This document shows positions 1-27,932 of a stretch of 64,000 bases of DNA, in pieces. The notes beneath the pieces were generated by a model that was given only the letters and a program-made list of their open reading frames with translations, made no database searches and was not told where the DNA came from. This stretch comes from Octopus sinensis. Lineage: Eukaryota. Both the position numbers and the translations under genes were made by a program. The first letter of the stretch is position 1; the number at the start of each line of letters is the position of its first letter. Location: assembly GCF_006345805.1 (NCBI RefSeq), contig NC_043018.1, forward strand, positions 22,568,001 to 22,632,000, in the 5' to 3' direction.

Positions 1-183
1 TAAAAGGAAACATTTTAAATATTAAAGATTTGTAGGTACGTGGTACTCCGTTATGCAAACACAATATGCTATGACGTATACTAAACGTTATAGAACTTAG
101 AGCCAGCACTGATTCTTGCTACAACGTTTCGTATCGACACGTCAGATGTAAACAGACAATGTGATCGAAGACATAAGTGCGTA

Positions 184-235
184 ATGAGTGTATATGCCAT
201 ATTTCGGGGGTTGTTGACCCTTCTTCAGCACTCAT
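184..235 (-). ncRNA. Minimal type I hammerhead ribozyme motif, apparently intact
   Basis: AUGAGUG-CUGAAGA-a-GGG-ucaacaacc-CCC-GAAA-uauggcaua-UA-CACUCAU: 7-bp stem I, full core, near-palindromic stem III, AUA cleavage triplet. Confidence 0.7.
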
Positions 236-903
236 CTAACCCACTGCACACAACAGTGTTAAGCTGTTGGATATACCAGGGCGAAATGCTTAGCGGTATT
301 TCGTCTGTCGTTACGTTCTGAGTTCAAATTCTGCCGAGGTCGACTTTGCCTTTCATCCTTTCGGGATCGATAAATAAAGTACCAGTTTCGCACTGGGTCG
401 ATGTAATCGACCTAATCCGTTTGTCTGTCCTTGTTTGTCCCCTCTGTGTTTAACTCATTGTGGGTAATAAAGAAATAAGAAACGTTAGTACGCCGGGCGA
501 AATCCTTAGCGGTATTTCGTCTGCCGCTACGTTCTGAGTTCAAATTCCGCCGAGATCAACTTTTCCTTTCATCCTTTCGGAGTCGATAAATTAAGGACCA
601 GTTACGCACTGGGGTCGATATAATCGACTTAATCCGTTTGTCTGTCCTTGTTTGTCCTCTCTGTGTTTAGCCCCTTGTGGGTAGTAAAGAAATAGGTATT
701 TCGTCTGCCGTTACGTTCTGAGTTCAAATTCTGCCTAGGTCGACTTTGCCTTTCATCCTTTCGGGGTCAATAAATTAAGTGCCAGTTGCGTCCTGGGCCG
801 ATCTAATCGACTGGCGCCTTGCCCAAAAATTTCGGGCTTTGTGCCTAGAGTAGAAAAGATTATTAATGTATCTGATTTATTTATCTGCAGAATTGCCTAC
901 ATA

Positions 904-1120
904 TGATGGGAAAGACCGGTTTATGGGGTTACCCTGTGTTTCCCGTCCATAAGGGGTTTGGCAGACTCCAAGCCTGTTGGCCTAAGAACTCTTCAAAATA
1001 TTCAAGATATTCTGAAGAGGTCTTAGGCCAACAGATTTGGGGTCTGACGATACGCCGTAAGGCCAAACCCCTCATGAACGGGAAACCCAGGGTAACCCCA
1101 TAAATCTGCCGCCCCCATTA
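904..1120. mobile_element. Foldback element carrying a decayed hammerhead motif (1039-1099, plus strand)
   Basis: The whole segment folds back on itself (ctgttggcctaaga...tcttaggccaacag). The right arm reads GGGGU-CUGACGA-uac-GCC-guaa-GGC-cAAA-CCC...GGG-UA-ACCCC, with G12 lost. Confidence 0.6.
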
Positions 1121-1135
1121 TAATATGTGTGTGTA

Positions 1136-1455: not shown

Positions 1456-1855
1456 TGTGTGTGTGTGCGTTGTGCTGTGTGTGTGTGTGTGTGTGGTATG
1501 TGGTGTGTGTGTGTGTGTGCGTGTGCGTGTGTGTGTATGTGTGTGTATGTGTGTGTTGTATGTGTGTGTGTATGTGTGTGTATGTGTGTGTGTGTGTGCG
1601 TGTGCGTGTGTGTGTGTGTATGTGTGTGTGTGTGCGTGTGCGTGTGTGTGTGCGTGTGCGTGTGCGTGTGTATGTGTGTGTGTGTGTGTGTTTTTGTATG
1701 TATGTATGTATAACATGCATTCATATACACACACCTATACTCATGCATCAGCGCATACATTTGTCTTAATCACTGTTTCCCCAATTCTGGTTCTTCCCGT
1801 CCTTCCCATGTTCAACTCCACAATATTCTACGCATTATAAAATTAAATAAGTTAC

Positions 1856-1925
1856 CTTCTTTGGTTTATCATCTATTCCCTCGTATATCAATCCTTCTGG
1901 CAGACAATTTCCTTCCGTGCCCCAT
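1856..1925 (-). CDS. IDO: IDO-family exon 9 (G-WGTEGNCLPEGLIYEGIDDKPKK); gene continues beyond the left edge
   Basis: tag/gtaact sites, 70 nt; LPEGLIYEG motif. The GGSAAQS loop and proximal-His exons were not found in 1-1855. Confidence 0.92.
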
Positions 1926-2829
1926 CTATTTTTGTAAGAAACGGAGAATGAGACATAAGCTTTAGGTGCTGGGGCTTGACATTGTGACATTTATTTTTAC
2001 ATACGAACAAATGTGTTTGCATGTGTGGGCACTGTATGGCCAAATGGACTGTTCCTTCTAAGGCGCAATGGCCCAGTGGTTAGGGCAGCGGACTCGCGGT
2101 CGTAGGATCGCGGTTTCGATTCCCAGACCGGGCGCCGTGAGTGTTTATTGAGCGAAAACACCTAAAACTCCATGAGGCTCCGGCAGGGGATGGTGGTGAT
2201 CCCTGCCGTATTCTTTCGCCACAACTTTCTCTCACTCTTACTTCCTGTTTCTGTTGTACCTGTATTTCAAAGTGAGTGTTTATTGAGCGAAAACATCTAA
2301 AGCCCCACGAGGCTCCGGCAGGGGATGGTGGTGATCCCTGCCGTATTCTTTCGCCACAACTTTCTCTCACTCTTACTTCCTGTTTCTGTTGTACCTGTAT
2401 TTCAAAGGGCCGGCCTTGTCACTCTCTGTGTCACGCTGAATATCCCCGAGAACTACGTTAAGGGTACTCGTGTCTGTGGAGTGCTCAGCCATTTACACGT
2501 TGATTTCACGAGCAGGCTGTTCCGTTGATTCGGATCAACCATAACCCTCGTCGTCGTAACCGACGGAGTGCTTCCACACAATAGGGCTTTTATCACACAC
2601 ACTGTGTCACACAGATTGTGCATGAAAATAGCGTTAAGAATGGATGCGTGCGTTGGTGAGGTTTGCTTGTCGACTATTAAGCTTCTTACCGGTTGCTCAA
2701 GGGCAGATAATTTTTAATTGATTGAATAACTGCATCGTCATCGTCAAACAGTGGAGACAAACTACTATGAACAAACAAATATACATACGGACAAATGTAG
2801 AATATATCGATATATACACACACACACAC

Positions 2830-15552: not shown

Positions 15553-15639
15553 CTGGTTAAAGTAGAAATTATATTTGGGCTTTATATAGATGGACGTACA
15601 GACAGACAGACAGACAGACAGACAAACTGACTGACAGAC

Positions 15640-15717
<78 letters not shown>

Positions 15718-15810
15718 GTTTCTTTATTAGCCACACAGGGCTGCACACAGATGGGACAAGTTACAAGGTAGAGCTTTTCTTTTGGGGATGAAAAAAACAA
15801 AAAACAAAAG

Positions 15811-15926
<116 letters not shown>

Positions 15927-16129
15927 CAGATGGGAGAGAATTCACAAAAAAAGACAAAAGACGAAGACAGGTGGTGTAGAAAACAAACAGATGTATTAGT
16001 ATAACGCTCGGGAATTGAAAAAGTCTTTAATGTTTCGAGCCTACGCTCTTCCACAAAAAGGAACACAAAGAAACAAGGAGAGAAAAATGTGTGTAGTGGC
16101 TAGCGATCTATCATGGTGATATAGATAGG

Positions 16130-16229
<100 letters not shown>

Positions 16230-16250
16230 AAGACAGACAGACAGACAGAC

Positions 16251-16337
<87 letters not shown>

Positions 16338-16650
16338 GGCATACTTACACGCAACACACATACATACATTTAAAAACAGTATAAACAATCATTTACCCCA
16401 ACACACACACACACATAAAATAAAATAAAAAGATCTTTCTACGACTGTTAGTTTAATATCTGATAATTTTTTCTAATTAAATTGTTATGCTCTATCAAAT
16501 AATTATGAGGATAAAATAATTAATTTCTCTTTCAGGTCAGTTTTGTATAAAAAAAAAAACAACTTAATAATAAGGATTTCATACAAATTGATATTATTCT
16601 CCTGAACAAATTAGTTGTTAGTTTAGAATATATTTATAAAACATACTCAC

Positions 16651-16665
16651 TCTAACTCCAGGGGC
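16651..16665 (-). CDS. IDO: IDO-family exon 5, 15-nt microexon (K-PLEL-D)
   Basis: ttcttacacttcag|gcccctggagttaga|gtgagt; phase 2-2. Restores the frame between exons 4 and 6 and matches the 15-nt exon of human IDO1 (KPLTYE). Confidence 0.88.
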
Positions 16666-17437
16666 CTGAAGTGTAAGAAATATCATAAAAGCAATATAAA
16701 ATACTACGCAAAAAAAAAGATGTTAAAATATATCAAAATATTTTTTTAAATGTAAGATACGAAACACAGCTTTACGAAACTACGCTAATCTGACAAGTAC
16801 AGTAATATAATCTTTTCTGCTAAAGGCACAAGGCCTGATCTTTTAGAGGAGGAGGGAGTTAAGTCGATTGCATCGGCACCAGTACTCAACTAAATTTATC
16901 GACCCCGAAAGGATGAAAAGCAAAGTCGACCTCGGCGGAATTTGAACTCAGAACGTAGCGACAGGCGAAATACCTATTTCTTTATTGCCCACAAGGGGCT
17001 AAACACAAAGAGGACAAACAAGGACAGACAAACGGATTAAGTCGACTATATCGACCCCAGTGCGTAACCCTGAGAGGATGAAAGGCAAAGTCGACCTTGG
17101 CGGAATTTGAACTCAGAACGTAACGTTCTTTGTTTCTGTGTGATTGATGTTGTTGTTGTTTTCTTTTTTTTTCTTCAAAACTTTTCATCAATGCGTAGGA
17201 GTGGCTGTGTGGTAAGTAGCTTGCTTACCAGCCACATGGTTCCGGGTTCAGTCCCACTGTGTGGCAACTTGGGCAACTGTCTTCTACTATGGCCTCGAGC
17301 CGACCAAAGCCTTGTGAATGGATTTGGTAGACGGAAACTGAAAGAAGACTGTCGTATATATGTATATATATATGTATATATATATGTATGTATATATATA
17401 TATGTATGTATATATATATATATAATATATATTATAT

Positions 17438-17472
<35 letters not shown>

Positions 17473-17474
<2 letters not shown>

Positions 17475-18133
17475 CTGTAAAATAATATGTGACAATTATT
17501 CGGTAGCCAAGATAAAACTCTGAGTTTCGGATGCCGAAACTCTTCGGTTATCTGGCCATCTGAAAAATGCTATGAAAAAATACCGTTATACAAAGGGAAA
17601 TTACTTATACAAAAGCACTAATTCGAATGACCGCTAATTAAGATAACGTTAAAAGTTCATAGTAAACACGTAAGCATGCCTATTCATACGTACATGTGTG
17701 CGCTCGTGCACCTACGTGCGTACGTATACATCACTATGAAAACGTACATATCTTCACTCACATTTTTCGCCAAATGTATATGCATATATATACAATCTCA
17801 TACACACACACACACGCACCGTAAAATTTCATACATACGTCTACATACGCACAAGCACAAGAAAAGATAGGGTTAAGGGTAACAATACAGAAAAAAAGGC
17901 ATAAGGATAAACTTTTAACGTTATCTTAATTAGCGGCCATTCGAATTAGCGCTTTTGTATAAGTAGCGGACTATAACACAGTAATTTCCCTTTGTATAAC
18001 GGTCTTTTTTCATAGCGTTTTTTCCAGATGGCCAGATAACCGAAGAGATGGTGGTGTGGATTTCCACCTCGGCATCCGAAACTCGGAGTTTTATCTTGGC
18101 TACCGAATAATTGTCACATATTATTTTACAGAT
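17473..18133. mobile_element. Long inverted repeat (arms about 185 and 225 bp) with a decayed hammerhead motif in each arm
   Basis: 17473-17657 is the reverse complement of 17910-18133 apart from two indels. Motif GAUAA-cCGAAGA...GAAA-cucggag-UU-UUAUC; flanked by (TA)n. Confidence 0.65.
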
Positions 18134-18205
18134 AAATTTCCTCTATATAATATTGAGGTCTCTTTCTCTTTTTTTTTAATCTTACCGTTTTTACAAATAT
18201 ATATA

Positions 18206-18241
<36 letters not shown>

Positions 18242-19155
18242 TGTATGTATGTATGTATGTATTTATGTACTATCGGGGTATATTCTACTGATGAAGGCAG
18301 AGCATTTCTTATGTAGAATCAGAAATCCGGGATCTGGAATTATCCAGTCATTTTTTTTTTTTTGCTAGTTTATTTTGTCTCTTTGTCCTCTCTCCTAGTG
18401 CTGTATGAACATTTAATGTAGTTTTAGGGTCAAGTTTTGGCTGCTATTTCCAGCGTGGTGGTATCTCTTAGATACCCTAAATTGTAATTTTAATAATTAC
18501 TACCTTTGAAGGTTTTTATTCCCATGCTGGCCACCTGATAAGATCGGTATTTAAATAACGATCTTATCCTTATATATATATATAATTTTTGTTTGCCTAT
18601 AGGTATTTATATACACTGGATAAATGTGTGAAATATTTTATATAATTTCAAAATTCGTGAACGGATTCTGATCATAATTTTCTGGCCGTTTTTTGGTTTT
18701 GTGAAATCCAGTTTCTTATGATTTGTACTGATTTCACGGAATTCAAACCGGCCCTAATTAATGTGGCAACGGTTATTTTTGAGTTGAAACTGTTCTAGAA
18801 ATTTGTAGCAATTGGGACACATGTGTCTTTAATATATAGATAAATAGATAGATGGATAGAGGGACGGACGGATGGATGGCTGATTGGATGGACAGATGGA
18901 CGGTTGGACAGATGGATGGATGGATAGATGGATGCATGGATGCATGGATGCATGGATGGATGGATGCATGGATGGATGCATGGATGCATGGATGCATGGA
19001 TGCATGGATGGATGAATGGATGGATGGATGGATAGATGGATGGGTGAATGTATGGATAGATGGATGGATGGATGCATGCATGGATGTATGGATAATTGGA
19101 TGGATGCATGGATGTATGGATAGATGGGTGGATGGATGGATAATTGAACACTTAC

Positions 19156-19274
19156 TTATTCTCATCTTTTTTCCTCCAGTTAATAATTATAATATCGGCA
19201 TATGTTAGAATAGGCTTCAAGTCTAATTCTTCTGATAGTCTGTACCATGGAACCGCCAACTGTTCCGGAATGCT
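19156..19274 (-). CDS. IDO: IDO-family exon 4 ([40 protein letters not shown])
   Basis: cag/gtaagt sites, 119 nt, ends in phase 2; PILTYAD and NW motifs. Confidence 0.95.
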
Positions 19275-19629
19275 CTGGAAAAGAAAGAAGAGTTGTATTC
19301 TAATGGAAATGACGAATAAAAATCAGTCATCGCAATATTACTCCGCATAAAATATTCCTTATGAAGCACTTCTCATAAATTATCTTATCATGTCAGAAAT
19401 TAGTTGATCCGAATCTTCGTAGACTAATGTATGATGTTTAGAGACTTAGCGGTATTTCGTCTATCTTCATGCTCTGAGTTCAAATTCCGCCGAAGTCGAC
19501 TTTGCCTTTCATTCTTTCGGGGTCGATAAATTAAATACCAGTGAAACACTGGGGTCGATCTAATCGACTGGCCCCCTCTCCCAAAATTTCGGACCTTGTG
19601 CCTAGAGTAGAAAAGAATATTTCTCTCTT

Positions 19630-19665
<36 letters not shown>

Positions 19666-19890
19666 TCTCTCTCTCACTTTCTCTTGGTTAAAGAAGTGTA
19701 CCGGAAGTGTTCGCCAGTATCAATACATACTTCCGGTACACGTCAATCAAAAGAAAGAAGAGAGGTGGTAAGTAATGTAATTCTCGATACAACATGAAAT
19801 ATTTCATGTTTTCTCTCGCAGTTTTAACAAGATATATAAATATGTATATATATGCGTGTGTGTATGTGTGTGTGTGTGTGTGCATATATT

Positions 19891-20430
19891 TGTCTCTAAA
19901 TGTGACTAGAGTGTTAGGAAACACCTACACCTAAGGCGCTCTGATGAAAACATATATACTAACAGGGACTTTAATTGTCTGAAAAATACTGATCGAAAAT
20001 TCTTAATTCTGACGTCAGTTTCGGCAATTTCCGTTGCCTCATCAGTTAATCCCCCTCCATTGTTCGGCTTTTTCAGGACCTGCTTCACTATTGATATTTA
20101 TATTTTCATCATCCAAATTACTGGGTGATTTAGCAATTCGTTAATGTGTATATATATAATTAATATAAACAGCAGATTGCAATGTTTCGCCAAAAAGGAG
20201 AATTATAATTGTCACTAAATGTGACTAGGGTGTTAGGAAACATCTACATTGCTAGAAATAAGAGCTAAATTTGTCTAATACTGTAGTTAACGCACATGAA
20301 TGAAAACATATACACTTACAGGGACCGAAAAATGCCGATCGAAAATTCTTAATGCAGACGTCAGTTTCGCCAATTTCTGTTGCCTCATCAGTTAAGCCCA
20401 CTCGATTGTTCGGCTTTTCCGGACATATTT
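19891..20430 (-). mobile_element. Direct-repeat pair with two hammerhead motifs 346 nt apart (retrozyme or pseudo-LTR-like)
   Basis: Motifs at 20002-20049 and 20348-20396: UUAA-CUGAUGA-GGCAA-cggaaa-UUGCC-GAAA-CUGACGUCAG-(A/C)A-UUAA. U16.1 is mutated in both copies. Confidence 0.75.
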
Positions 20431-20585
20431 CGCTATATATGTACACACGCGCGCACACACACACATGTATGTATGTATATAAACAGGGTGATTATGGTTG
20501 AACGTCTACCTTTAGTTCTATGAGCTTAATTAAACGAAGGCAACAAAGTTATTTATTGAAAATAGTGTTAATATCATAACTTTAC

Positions 20586-20705
20586 CTTGGTCACTCCTTC
20601 TTCGCCTTCTTGCCAAATATAACCTGATGCAATGATAGCAAGCTGTAGATGTGCCAAACGCTTCTCCTTGTGCCCGTTCAACTTTGCAATGTCCAAAAGA
20701 GTCAT
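20586..20705 (-). CDS. IDO: IDO-family exon 3 (MTLLDIAKLNGHKEKRLAHLQLAIIASGYIWQEGEEGVTK)
   Basis: cag/gtaaag sites, 120 nt. KRLAHLQL..SGY.WQEGE closely matches abalone IDO-like myoglobin as recalled. Confidence 0.95.
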
Positions 20706-21592
20706 CTGAGGAAACATAAGAATTTTTGTCTTTTTCATCGTACACACAATTTGAGTCAAAAGATTATTCTTTCATTGTTTTGGGGTTTTTTTTTATTTTT
20801 TGATATATGGGCATAGGAAGGCGTCAAGCTGGCAGAACCGTTAGCATGTCGGACAAAATGCTTTGTAGCATTTCGTCTCTTTACGTTCTGAGTTCAAATG
20901 CAGCTGAGGTTGACTTTGCCTTTAATCTTTTCGGAGTCGATAAAATAAACACCGGTCGAGCACTGAGGTCGATGTAATCGACTTGCCCCTTATCCGAAAT
21001 TGCTGACATTGTGCTAAAATTTGAAACCAGTATGGCAAATGAATGCAGTCGATATTGAGGTAACGGGACTCTTCGATCTTGCGAGGGACATAACTTATCT
21101 AGTGTTAATGCTTTGATAAAATACACTGGTACACTTTGTGAAGTGGTTGGTGTCAGGAAAGGCATCCAACCGTAGAAAGCATGCGAAAAATTGTGATATA
21201 ATAGCGATATGCCGTTCTCCGACACATCTAGGCGTTTCCCGACCCGTCTGTTCTCCAAATGAGAACTTATTCACGACGTAACAATCCGTTTAACCCTTCA
21301 GCATTCAGAATACTCTATCAAATGTAATACTTATTCATTCAAATTGTGTTGAATTATCATGCATTATCCGATAGCTCTTAAATTTCGATGGTGTGATTAC
21401 TTAGAATGACATTGTAGGGCGGGTGTAAAGACCAAATCTGGCCAGTTTGAACATAAAACATGGAGAATATTTTGACCGGATATGGCCGGTTTAAATGCGA
21501 CAAGCTTAACAACAGCAACAATAACAACATCGGTAACAGCAACAACAACAACAAAACTAAGCATTAAGTATAATTGCTATATTTTTACGTAC

Positions 21593-26437: not shown

Positions 26438-27932
26438 TGTGTGCGTGCATGCAGTGTAGCTTAGATGTGAACAGAGGCAAAACGAGCCATACACAAGCAC
26501 ACTCATACATAGACACTTACAGACACAAAGACAAATGTGCAGAAGTACTCAAAGACAAATGCCAGTTCCTCAATCAACTGAATAAACTACTCACTGAGCA
26601 TGCATGGCTGAGTATTCCACAGACTGGCGTGCAAAGCTGGCTCTTTGAATTACAGGTACATTAGTTCATTAAGGCGGCAAGCTGGCAGAAACGTTAGCAC
26701 GTCGGGCGAAATGCGTAGCCGTATTTCGTCTGCCGTTACGTTCTGAGTTCAAATTCCGCCGAGGTCGACTTTACTTTTCATCCTTTCGGGATCGATAACT
26801 TAAGTACCAGTTACGCACTGGGGTCGATGTAATCGACTTAATCCGTTTGTCTGTCCTTGTTTGTCCCCTCTGTGTTTAGCCCCTTGTGGGTAATAAAGAA
26901 ATAGGTACATTAGTCCATTCAAAGGATCTCATTGGGTGGGCACACGCACAAGCACACAAGCATACATGCACACACATGCACATTCATTTATATCTATGTA
27001 CGACAGGCTTCTTCCAGTTTACAGCTATCAAATCCATTCACAAGGCTTTGGTCAGCCTGGGTCTATGGAAGAGAAACTTATCCAAAATACCACATATATT
27101 TCTTTATTGCCCACAAGGGGCTAAACACAGAGGGGACAAACAAGGACAGACAAACGGATTAAGTCGATTACATCGATCCCAGTGCGTAACTGGTACTTAA
27201 TTTATCGACCCCGAAAGGATGAAAGGCAAAGTCGACCTCGACGGAATTTGAACTCAGAACGTAACGGCAGACGAAATACCTATTTCTTTAATACCTACAA
27301 GGGGCTAAACACAGAGGGGACAAACAAGGACAGACAAACGGATTAAGTCGATTACATTGATCCCAGTGCGTAACTGGTACTTAATTTATCGACCCCGAAA
27401 GGATGAAAGGCAAAGTCGACCTCGACGGAATTTGAACTCAAAACGTAACGGCAGACGAAATACGGCTACGCATTTCGCCCGGCGTGCTAACGTTTCTGCC
27501 AGCTCGCCGCCTTATCCAAAATATCCAAAATACCACGTAGTGTGATTGGACCCCCAAACCATGTGATTGGGAAGTAAGCGTCTTACCATCCTACCATACC
27601 TGTGCCTCCACACAGCCATACATGCACTTAATATACATATAACATTTATAAACATACAGTGAATACATCTTCACAAATGTGCCCATTTACTTATAAACAT
27701 GGACACACACTCACTCACACACACACACACACACACAGAATTAGAAATATCTGTCTATATATGTGCACATATAATACACAGTGGCTGTGTGGTAAGTAGC
27801 TTGTTTACCAACCACATGGTTCTGGGTTCAGTCCCACTGCGTGGCACCTTGGGCAAGTGTCTTATACTATAGCCTCGGGCCGACCAAAGCTTGTGAGTGG
27901 ATTTGGTAGACGGAAACTGAAAGATACCCGTC

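What the first reader, a model, noticed from the sequence alone, without database searches (positions are those of the whole stretch)
184..235. Apparently intact hammerhead in sense orientation within an IDO intron
Seen: all core nucleotides are present, with a 7-bp stem I, a G-C-closed stem II and an AUA triplet, on the same strand as the IDO pre-mRNA downstream of exon 9. Stem III would need a very short loop or dimerisation. Inference: it could cut the nascent transcript before the exons carrying the haem-ligand His are spliced, or be silent as a monomer. A second, more broken motif (CUGACG...GAAACGUUGUA) lies at about 115-155.
Basis: partly seen in the sequence, partly recalled or inferred. 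Interest (0 to 1): 0.75.

Follow-up and report, generated by a model that had tools for sequence, protein, structure and literature searches.

The report
Lone hammerhead-like motif in octopus intron
A 52-base stretch in an intron of an Octopus vulgaris IDO gene does spell out a hammerhead-ribozyme-like motif on the gene's own strand, but it is a weakly folding single copy that evolves like the intron around it, so it is most likely a dead relic or a look-alike, not a switch that cuts the IDO message.

Summary
The motif is real. On the minus strand, 235..184 reads AUGAGUG-CUGAAGA-A-GGG(9-nt loop)CCC-GAA-AUAU(GGC)AUAU-A|CACUCAU. That is a type-I hammerhead layout with every core base and an AUA cleavage triplet, cutting after window position 191. 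It lies in sense in an IDO intron of Octopus vulgaris, about 265 nt upstream of the next exon.

It is not "intact". It needs an extra A between A9 and G10.1. Helix II has 3 bp closing a 9-nt loop. Helix III has 4 A-U pairs and a 3-nt loop.

- **Chance:** rare for one window (about 4e-5) but about 2 expected per 2.8-Gb genome.
- **Rfam:** no hammerhead model matches, even at E<=10 on 161 nt.
- **Copy number:** there is no second copy and no tandem repeat.
- **Folding:** the ribozyme fold (-6.7 kcal/mol) loses to another fold (-9.8); P(helix III) is about 0.04.
- **Ortholog:** the O. bimaculoides intron keeps the block at 92.6% identity, no more in the motif than in its flanks. Both differences inside the motif hit helix II and leave a C×C mismatch.

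Verdict: a solitary, probably inactive hammerhead-like sequence, either a decayed retroelement-type minimal hammerhead or chance. The second motif at 115-151 is not a hammerhead. Interest is low.

The parts
184..235 (-). Hammerhead-like motif, type-I layout (helix I open, helices II and III capped)
   Evidence: Sequence read. It is the only descriptor hit in the window. No Rfam match.
229..235 (-). Helix I, 5' strand AUGAGUG. G236 can add a G.U pair with U183.
   Evidence: The MFE fold keeps this helix when the 52-mer is folded alone. P(helix I) drops to 0.13-0.34 with 50-100 nt flanks.
222..228 (-). Core box CUGAAGA (C3-A9; N7 = A)
   Evidence: match 202-228, minus strand.
221..221 (-). Extra unpaired A between A9 and G10.1
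   Evidence: The descriptor matches only with a 1-nt insertion. A nucleotide at this position is typical of Penelope-like-element minimal hammerheads (PMC4209133).
206..220 (-). Helix II: GGG (220-218), 9-nt loop UCAACAACC (217-209), CCC (208-206)
   Evidence: The required register has pairing probability of about 0.12. O. bimaculoides has GCGG in place of GGGU (differences at 219 and 217).
203..205 (-). Core G12 A13 A14
192..202 (-). Helix III: AUAU (202-199), loop GGC (198-196), AUAU (195-192). It includes A15.1-U16.1 and is nearly self-complementary.
   Evidence: Pairing probability is about 0.04. The hairpin alone is not stable (0.0 kcal/mol), while a homodimer of the segment gives -10.4 kcal/mol.
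191..191 (-). A17, the predicted cleavage site (cut 3' of this base, triplet AUA)
   Evidence: Position derived from the sequence.
184..190 (-). Helix I, 3' strand CACUCAU
1..244 (-). Intron block orthologous to O. bimaculoides L002 23659-23902 (92.6% identity). It contains the motif.
115..151 (-). It is not a hammerhead.
   Evidence: U in place of A9, 2-bp helix II, no helix I. CUGA is CCGA in O. bimaculoides.
1855..1960 (-). IDO coding exon upstream of the intron (AYVSFSVSYKNRWGTEGNCLPEGLIYEGIDDKPKK). The true acceptor may be at about 1917.
   Evidence: tblastn with P0009, 89% identity. Sequence.

Best explanation
The element is a solitary hammerhead-like sequence in neutrally evolving intron DNA of an Octopus vulgaris IDO gene. 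It has the hammerhead core and three short helices in a type-I arrangement. However, the catalytic fold is weak, there is no partner copy to build a dimeric helix III, and there is no sign of selection to keep it.

I rate its origin as about even between two options:
- A decayed single copy of the 'minimal' type-I hammerheads that Penelope-like retroelements and retrozymes scatter through invertebrate genomes.
- A chance match.

In either case I expect it to do nothing measurable to the IDO pre-mRNA in vivo. At most it would cleave slowly in vitro at high Mg2+ or as an artificial dimer.

Shown: the sequence, its strand, its place in the intron, its rarity by chance, the lack of Rfam support, its single-copy state, and the state of the ortholog. 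Inferred: the lack of activity and the origin.
For: 1. No hammerhead family of Rfam (type I, type II, type III, HH9, HH10) matches at gathering threshold on the whole window. None matches at E<=10 on 1-1000 or on 100-260.
2. ViennaRNA gives the hammerhead fold -6.7 kcal/mol against an MFE of -9.8. The pairing probabilities are about 0.04 for helix III and about 0.12 for helix II in the required register. Helix I falls to 0.13-0.34 with natural flanks, and the folding z-score is -0.68.
3. No other copy of 1-260 exists in the window, and no tandem repeat covers it. The nearby second motif is not a hammerhead and cannot pair with helix III.
4. The O. bimaculoides ortholog is 92.6% identical over 244 nt. 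The motif has 2 differences in 52 nt against 16 in 192 nt outside it (Fisher p = 0.38). Both differences fall in helix II and leave G-C, C×C, G-C, G-C. The hammerhead fold there is -3.0 against an MFE of -6.9, and there is no two-sided compensatory change.
5. A motif this good is expected about twice per 2.8-Gb genome by chance.
6. Three features fit the published minimal hammerheads of Penelope-like elements: the extra base between A9 and G10.1, the G10.1-C11.1 pair, and a nearly self-complementary helix III. Those motifs occur mostly as solitary, heterogeneous copies with little or no monomer activity in vitro (PMC4209133). About 43% of Xenopus non-LTR retrozyme copies are intronic (bioRxiv 10.64898/2026.07.22.740005).
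Against: - For a single 64-kb window the chance expectation is only about 4e-5 to 1e-4, so pure coincidence is not comfortable.
- All core bases, helix I and helix III are identical in two octopus species.
- In O. bimaculoides helix I can extend to 8 bp, then an internal loop, then 5 more bp (GUGGG/CCCAC). That resembles the loop-1 architecture of real type-I hammerheads.
- The 244-nt block is somewhat better conserved (92.6%) than the mean of alignable intron sequence (86.8%).
- Nearest-neighbour energy models do not capture hammerhead junction stacking or tertiary contacts, so low predicted occupancy does not prove inactivity.
- Natural hammerheads with an extra base after A9 are active; this is my recollection of the chrysanthemum chlorotic mottle viroid case, which PMC4209133 cites as De la Pena and Flores 2001.
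Confidence: 0.78

Rival explanations
1. The motif is an active self-cleaving ribozyme that cuts nascent IDO pre-mRNA in this intron and thereby lowers or truncates IDO output before the haem-binding exons are joined.
For: The complete core, an allowed AUA triplet and a 7-8 bp helix I lie in sense about 265 nt upstream of the next exon. The motif is improbable by chance in one window. Intronic sense hammerheads exist in amniote genes such as RECK and CTCL (PMC6155905).
Against: - No Rfam hammerhead match, including the intronic HH9 and HH10 models.
- Weak helices II and III, with the catalytic fold disfavoured.
- No recognisable loop-loop contacts in the O. vulgaris version.
- Helix II is not preserved in O. 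bimaculoides, and the motif is no more conserved than its flanks.
- Minimal hammerheads without tertiary contacts are slow at cellular Mg2+ (PMC6155905).
- From memory, not checked here: intron cleavage by a hammerhead need not block splicing (Dye, Gromak and Proudfoot 2006) unless it is very fast (Fong et al. 2009).
Confidence: 0.07
2. The motif belongs to a still-functional mobile element, either a non-LTR retrozyme monomer or the terminal repeat of a Penelope-like element. Its transcripts would be processed by the hammerhead into linear or circular RNAs, independently of IDO.
For: It has a type-I layout, low GC (0.385 for 1-244), the extra base after A9 and a palindrome-like helix III, as in minimal hammerheads of Penelope-like elements. 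In O. bimaculoides a 70-nt direct repeat with 334-nt spacing brackets the motif, and 334 nt is within the retrozyme monomer size range of 170-400 nt (PMC7229834).
Against: There is only one hammerhead-like motif and no tandem unit. The sequences next to the two 70-nt repeats are unrelated. No further copy exists in 64 kb of O. vulgaris or 45 kb of O. bimaculoides. The intron has no reverse-transcriptase or endonuclease reading frame; the only ORFs are microsatellite artefacts. The locus is orthologous and fixed in two species, so it is old.
Confidence: 0.04
3. The 244-nt block is conserved for another reason, such as an intronic splicing element or a structured RNA near the 3' splice site. On this reading the hammerhead resemblance is incidental.
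For: The block is 92.6% identical between species against 86.8% for alignable intron sequence overall. It lies within about 330 nt of the next exon.
Against: Other intron blocks reach 92-93.5% identity. The lower average may partly reflect repeats that are not truly orthologous. No Rfam family matches the block. Folding is not unusual (z = -0.68).
Confidence: 0.08

Closest known systems
Minimal type-I hammerheads of Penelope-like retroelements (Cervera and De la Pena 2014, PMC4209133)
   Same: Type-I layout. One unpaired nucleotide between A9 and G10.1. G10.1-C11.1 pair. Short, nearly self-complementary helix III that suggests action as a dimer. No obvious loop-loop contacts. They are mostly found as solitary, heterogeneous copies in invertebrate genomes, with little or no monomer activity in vitro.
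   Different: Those motifs have a long helix II (6-8 bp) and a short helix I (4-5 bp). Here helix II is 3 bp with a 9-nt loop and helix I is 7-8 bp. No flanking terminal repeat or RT/GIY-YIG reading frame is present. No family of related copies could be shown.
Non-LTR retrozymes of animals (Cervera and De la Pena 2020, PMC7229834)
   Same: A type-I hammerhead in AT-rich non-coding DNA. The 334-nt spacing of a flanking repeat in O. bimaculoides is in the monomer size range.
   Different: Retrozymes are tandem arrays in which every 170-400-nt unit carries a hammerhead. Here there is one motif and no tandem unit.
Intronic hammerheads of amniotes (HH9 in RECK, HH10 in CTCL; Rfam RF02275 and RF02277)
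   Same: Type-I motif in sense orientation inside an intron of a protein-coding gene.
   Different: Those are canonical, with loop-loop contacts, and are ultraconserved across birds and mammals. This one fails their Rfam models, lacks recognisable tertiary contacts, and helix II differs between two congeneric octopuses.
Chrysanthemum chlorotic mottle viroid (+) hammerhead, with an extra A between A9 and G10.1 (recalled; cited in PMC4209133 as De la Pena and Flores 2001)
   Same: An extra nucleotide at the same core junction in a natural, active hammerhead.
   Different: That one is a type-III viroid ribozyme with stable helices and loop-loop contacts, and its activity has been proven.

Membership tests
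Hammerhead ribozyme (general definition) | Conserved core: C3 U4 G5 A6 N7 G8 A9, G12 A13 A14, A15.1-U16.1, H17 | tested here: met
   All are present on the minus strand 228..191 and identical in O. bimaculoides.
Hammerhead ribozyme (general definition) | Core strands directly abut helix II (A9 next to G10.1) | tested here: not met
   One extra A (window 221) is needed; my descriptor matches only with a 1-nt insertion. Natural exceptions exist.
Hammerhead ribozyme (general definition) | Three helices around the core that form in the folded RNA | tested here: inconclusive
   The helices can be drawn: I has 7-8 bp, II has 3 bp, III has 4 A-U bp. But the hammerhead fold is -6.7 kcal/mol against an MFE of -9.8, with P(helix III) about 0.04 and P(helix II register) about 0.12. 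In O. bimaculoides helix II has a C×C mismatch.
Hammerhead ribozyme (general definition) | Self-cleavage 3' of position 17 | not testable with these tools
   This needs in vitro transcription or mapping of RNA ends.
Rfam hammerhead families (Hammerhead_1, Hammerhead_II, Hammerhead_3, HH9, HH10) | Covariance-model score at or above the gathering threshold | tested here: not met
   No hit at gathering threshold on the window. No hammerhead hit even at E<=10 on 1-1000 or on 100-260.
Canonical type-I hammerhead of metazoans | Loop 1 / loop 2 tertiary contacts (helix I about 6 bp with an internal loop, helix II about 4 bp with a small loop) | tested here: inconclusive
   In O. vulgaris helix I is continuous and the distal extension has a G×G mismatch. 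O. bimaculoides allows 8 bp, then a UUA/A internal loop, then 5 bp. Loop 2 is 9 nt. The conserved contact nucleotides could not be scored.
Minimal hammerhead of Penelope-like elements | [quoted passage not shown] | tested here: met
   A221, then G220 paired with C206. The criteria come from PMC4209133.
Minimal hammerhead of Penelope-like elements | Palindromic 15.2-16.2 and loop 3 | tested here: met
   AUAUGGCAUAU is self-complementary at 10 of 11 positions. The predicted homodimer is -10.4 kcal/mol. Any short hairpin is near-palindromic, so this is weak evidence.
Minimal hammerhead of Penelope-like elements | Long helix II (6-8 bp) | tested here: not met
   Helix II is 3 bp around a 9-nt loop.
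Minimal hammerhead of Penelope-like elements | Lies in a terminal repeat of an RT/GIY-YIG element, or belongs to a multi-copy family in the genome | tested here: inconclusive
   There is no such reading frame in the intron and no second copy in the 64 kb plus 45 kb available. The rest of the genome could not be searched.
Non-LTR retrozyme | Tandem repeats of 170-400 nt, each with a type-I hammerhead | tested here: not met
   No tandem repeat covers 1-260. In O. bimaculoides only a 70-nt segment is duplicated, 334 nt away, and there is no second motif.
Domesticated intronic hammerhead (HH9/HH10 type) | Sense orientation within an intron of a protein-coding gene | tested here: met
   IDO exons are on the minus strand. 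The annotated O. bimaculoides gene model spans the orthologous intron.
Domesticated intronic hammerhead (HH9/HH10 type) | Conservation above the neutral level, with structure-preserving changes | tested here: not met
   There are 2 differences in 52 nt against 16 in 192 nt in the flanks (p = 0.38). Both differences in the motif alter helix II pairs, and no change compensates on both sides. Only two species were available.

The most novel reading that the evidence does not exclude
The O. vulgaris version, which has an uninterrupted G-C helix II, is an active and perhaps lineage-specific intronic hammerhead. It would cleave IDO pre-mRNA co-transcriptionally and tune tryptophan catabolism, or produce a truncated haem-less product. 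That would be a domesticated ribozyme in a cephalopod gene, independent of the amniote cases.
Probability: 0.06. Interest if true: 0.6.

Novelty: new member of a known kind. Interest (0 to 1): 0.2.

Why it matters
If the motif were active, it would be an invertebrate counterpart of the amniote intronic hammerheads, whose function is still unknown, placed in a gene of immune and metabolic interest. As the evidence stands it mainly shows two things. First, a full hammerhead core with three drawable helices can sit in an intron without covariance-model support, a stable fold or selective conservation. Second, such solitary motifs are expected in invertebrate genomes, both as retroelement debris and about twice per octopus genome by chance.

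Tried and rejected
- **Rfam:** I searched at gathering threshold on the whole window and at E<=10 on 1-1000, 100-260 and 19700-20700. No hammerhead hit appeared.
- **Second motif (151..115):** rejected. It has U in place of A9, a 2-bp helix II and no helix I, and its CUGA is not conserved.
- **Tandem or retrozyme structure:** rejected. There is no repeat over 1-260 in the window, and O. bimaculoides has only a 70-nt duplicate.
  - The first protein search found only an 89-aa O. vulgaris fragment.
  - The second gave O. bimaculoides as the only octopod. I set its E-value cut-off at 1e-20, which may have hidden short fragments.
  - The third, with the two flanking exons, found nothing.
  - A metagenome scan with a degenerate 39-mer found 0 matches.
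- **O. vulgaris IDO as a pseudogene:** the annotated product is only 89 aa, so I checked this. It is rejected for the part in the window. Seven exons are intact, and the exon-5 acceptor region is the same in both species. The short model looks like an annotation error.
- **Motif at 20 kb:** the CUGAUGA-hairpin-GAAAC motif in a 346-nt tandem duplicate was considered as a partner or a true hammerhead. It is rejected as a hammerhead. Position 16.1 is A or C rather than U, and helix I has 4 A-U pairs after a mismatch. No Rfam hit.

Full report
**Source and context.** An exon translation matched an 89-aa 'indoleamine 2,3-dioxygenase 2 [Octopus vulgaris]' at 99% identity. That product is encoded on chromosome record OX597835.1 of assembly GCA_951406725.2, so the window is Octopus vulgaris. 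IDO exons lie on the minus strand. I then mapped them with the O. bimaculoides 'IDO1-like' protein P0009, 349 aa:

| Exon | Window coordinates (minus strand) |
|---|---|
| 1 | 32118 to about 32035 |
| 2 | 21688-21593 |
| 3 | 20708-20583 |
| 4 | 19277-19155 |
| 5 | 15554 to about 15450 |
| 6 | 8770-8651 |
| 7 | 1960-1855 |

The rest of the protein is not in the window. This includes GGSAAQSS and the haem-ligand region FRSYHMTIV.

**Position in the intron.** The O. bimaculoides locus L002 shows that window 244-1 corresponds to L002 23659-23902. The next exon starts at L002 23978. It is on the transcribed strand, about 265 nt upstream of the next 3' splice site and three exons before the His-bearing exon.

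**The motif.** The minus strand 235..184 reads as follows:

AUGAGUG / CUGAAGA / A / GGG-UCAACAACC-CCC / GAA / AUAU-GGC-AUAU / A | CACUCAU

- This is a type-I hammerhead arrangement with all invariant core bases.
- A15.1-U16.1 is present, and A17 is at window 191 (triplet AUA).
- Helix I has 7 bp, or 8 with a G.U.
- The G10.1-C11.1 closure of helix II requires an unpaired A between A9 and G10.1.
- Helix II is only three G-C pairs around a 9-nt loop.
- Helix III is four A-U pairs with a 3-nt loop.

It is not a hammerhead.

**Chance.**
- A descriptor that accepts the candidate finds it as the only hit in the window. The descriptor requires CUGANGA, a 0-1 nt insert, a G-C-closed helix II of at least 3 bp, GAA, an A15.1...U16.1 helix III of at least 3 bp, H17 and helix I.
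- It finds nothing in 25.6 Mb of dinucleotide-preserving shuffles when helix I is at least 6 bp.
- Without any helix I requirement there were 13 matches in 25.6 Mb. With a pairing probability of 0.387 per added pair, helix I of at least 7 bp extrapolates to 6.6e-4 per Mb.
- That is about 4e-5 per 64-kb window and about 2 per 2.8-Gb genome.
- The motif is therefore unexpected in one window, but a genome-wide trawl should meet a couple of such motifs by chance. Shuffles also understate the frequency of inverted repeats in real DNA.

**Family tests.** No Rfam hammerhead model matches at gathering threshold. None matches with permissive filters at E<=10 on 1-1000 or on just 100-260, where hits of about 12-16 bits to unrelated families were listed.

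**Folding.**

| RNA or segment | Hammerhead fold (kcal/mol) | MFE (kcal/mol) |
|---|---|---|
| O. vulgaris 52-mer | -6.7 | -9.8 |
| O. bimaculoides 52-mer | -3.0 | -6.9 |

- The O. vulgaris MFE uses GGGU/ACCC and a CC/GG pairing instead of helix III.
- Pairing probabilities are about 0.04 for helix III and about 0.12 for helix II in the catalytic register.
- Helix I falls to 0.13-0.34 once 50-100 nt of natural flank are added.
- The helix III segment does not fold alone (0.0 kcal/mol) but can homodimerise (-10.4 kcal/mol).
- There is no second copy in cis. Nothing in the window resembles 1-260, and no tandem repeat covers it.

**Comparison with O. bimaculoides.**
- The 244-nt block is 92.6% identical between the species.
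- The motif has 2 differences in 52 nt, against 16 in 192 nt in the rest of the block (Fisher p = 0.38).
- Both differences in the motif are in helix II: GGGU in O. vulgaris against GCGG in O. bimaculoides. The O. bimaculoides helix becomes G-C, C×C, G-C, G-C.
- Two further differences just 3' of helix I (UACGCAC against CACCCAC) turn the G.U into G-C. They also let O. bimaculoides extend helix I by GUGGG/CCCAC beyond a UUA/A internal loop. O. vulgaris has a G×G mismatch there.
- Each species thus has one part better and one part worse, and no change compensates on both sides.
- An ancestor with both parts intact is conceivable. I could not obtain a third species to test this.
- Alignable intron sequence across the gene averages 86.8% identity, with blocks up to 93.5%. 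The block is on the conserved side but is not exceptional.

**Relation to known elements.** Published minimal hammerheads of Penelope-like elements share four features with this motif (PMC4209133):
- a conserved G10.1-C11.1 pair;
- a palindromic helix III;
- frequent occurrence as solitary, heterogeneous copies with little monomer activity.

They differ in having a long helix II (6-8 bp) and a short helix I. Animal retrozymes are tandem arrays of 170-400-nt units (PMC7229834), which is not the case here. The only hint is a 70-nt direct repeat 334 nt apart around the motif in O. bimaculoides, and the neighbouring sequences of the two copies are unrelated. In Xenopus about 43% of retrozyme copies are intronic, so an intronic location is unremarkable. 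Amniote intronic hammerheads are canonical and ultraconserved (PMC6155905), and this motif is neither. The same review warns that minimal-motif searches produced mostly false positives.

**Verdict.**
- The most likely explanation is an inactive or feeble solitary hammerhead-like sequence drifting neutrally in the intron.
- I rate its origin as roughly even between a decayed retroelement-type hammerhead and chance.
- An active, IDO-regulating ribozyme is not excluded, and I give it about 6-7%.

Noticed in passing
window 19900-20470, minus strand (core boxes at 20391-20365 and 20045-20019): Two tandem copies about 346 nt apart, roughly 88% alike over about 210 nt, lie in sense in the IDO intron just 3' of exon 20708-20583. 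Each carries CUGAUGA, a 5-bp hairpin (GGCAA...UUGCC) and GAAAC followed by the palindrome CUGACGUCAG. It looks like a hammerhead 'half': position 16.1 is A or C rather than U, and helix I is only UUAA/UUAA. Rfam gives no hit. It resembles the 'HHR_core' strings reported in Naiad Penelope-like elements (PMC8557442). The O. bimaculoides counterpart falls in an assembly gap.
   Followed up: partly
window 279-797, plus strand: Three partial tandem copies (83-92% alike) of a SINE-like element with a tRNA-like T-arm string (GTTCAAATTC) lie in this intron. Related copies appear elsewhere in the window, for example at about 19500-19620, 20880-21000 and 27097-27463. This cluster is absent from the orthologous O. 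bimaculoides intron, so it was inserted, or lost, after the species split. ARAGORN calls no tRNA here.
   Followed up: partly
window 902-1122: There are nested inverted repeats: arms 902-962 / 1062-1122 (84% complementary) and 962-1001 / 1007-1046 (88% complementary). Together they form a roughly 220-nt hairpin-forming element of the MITE kind next to a 580-nt (TG)n tract at 1126-1709. O. bimaculoides has only about half of it (L002 23374-23458).
   Followed up: no
window 15553-20715 (locus L001), and L002 13210-13970: Both public gene models look defective. The O. vulgaris model is an 89-aa fragment that ends 'PLELE' at the exon-5 acceptor, although seven IDO exons in the window are intact. 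The O. bimaculoides model P0009 lacks the conserved exon 'QMTLLDIAKLNGHKEKRLAHLQLAIIASGYIWQEGEEGVTK' because a run of N sits where it should be.
   Followed up: partly
L002 23484-23553 and 23818-23887: In O. bimaculoides a 70-nt direct repeat (89% identical) with 334-nt spacing brackets the hammerhead-like motif. O. vulgaris has only the downstream copy (window 85-16). Homology between the two species upstream of the motif stops at window 244, which is the 5' end of the extended helix I.
   Followed up: partly
window 1-244: This intron block is 92.6% identical to O. bimaculoides, against 86.8% for alignable intron sequence across the gene. The modest excess is unexplained. It may reflect closeness to the 3' splice site or noise from repeats in the other blocks.
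   Followed up: no
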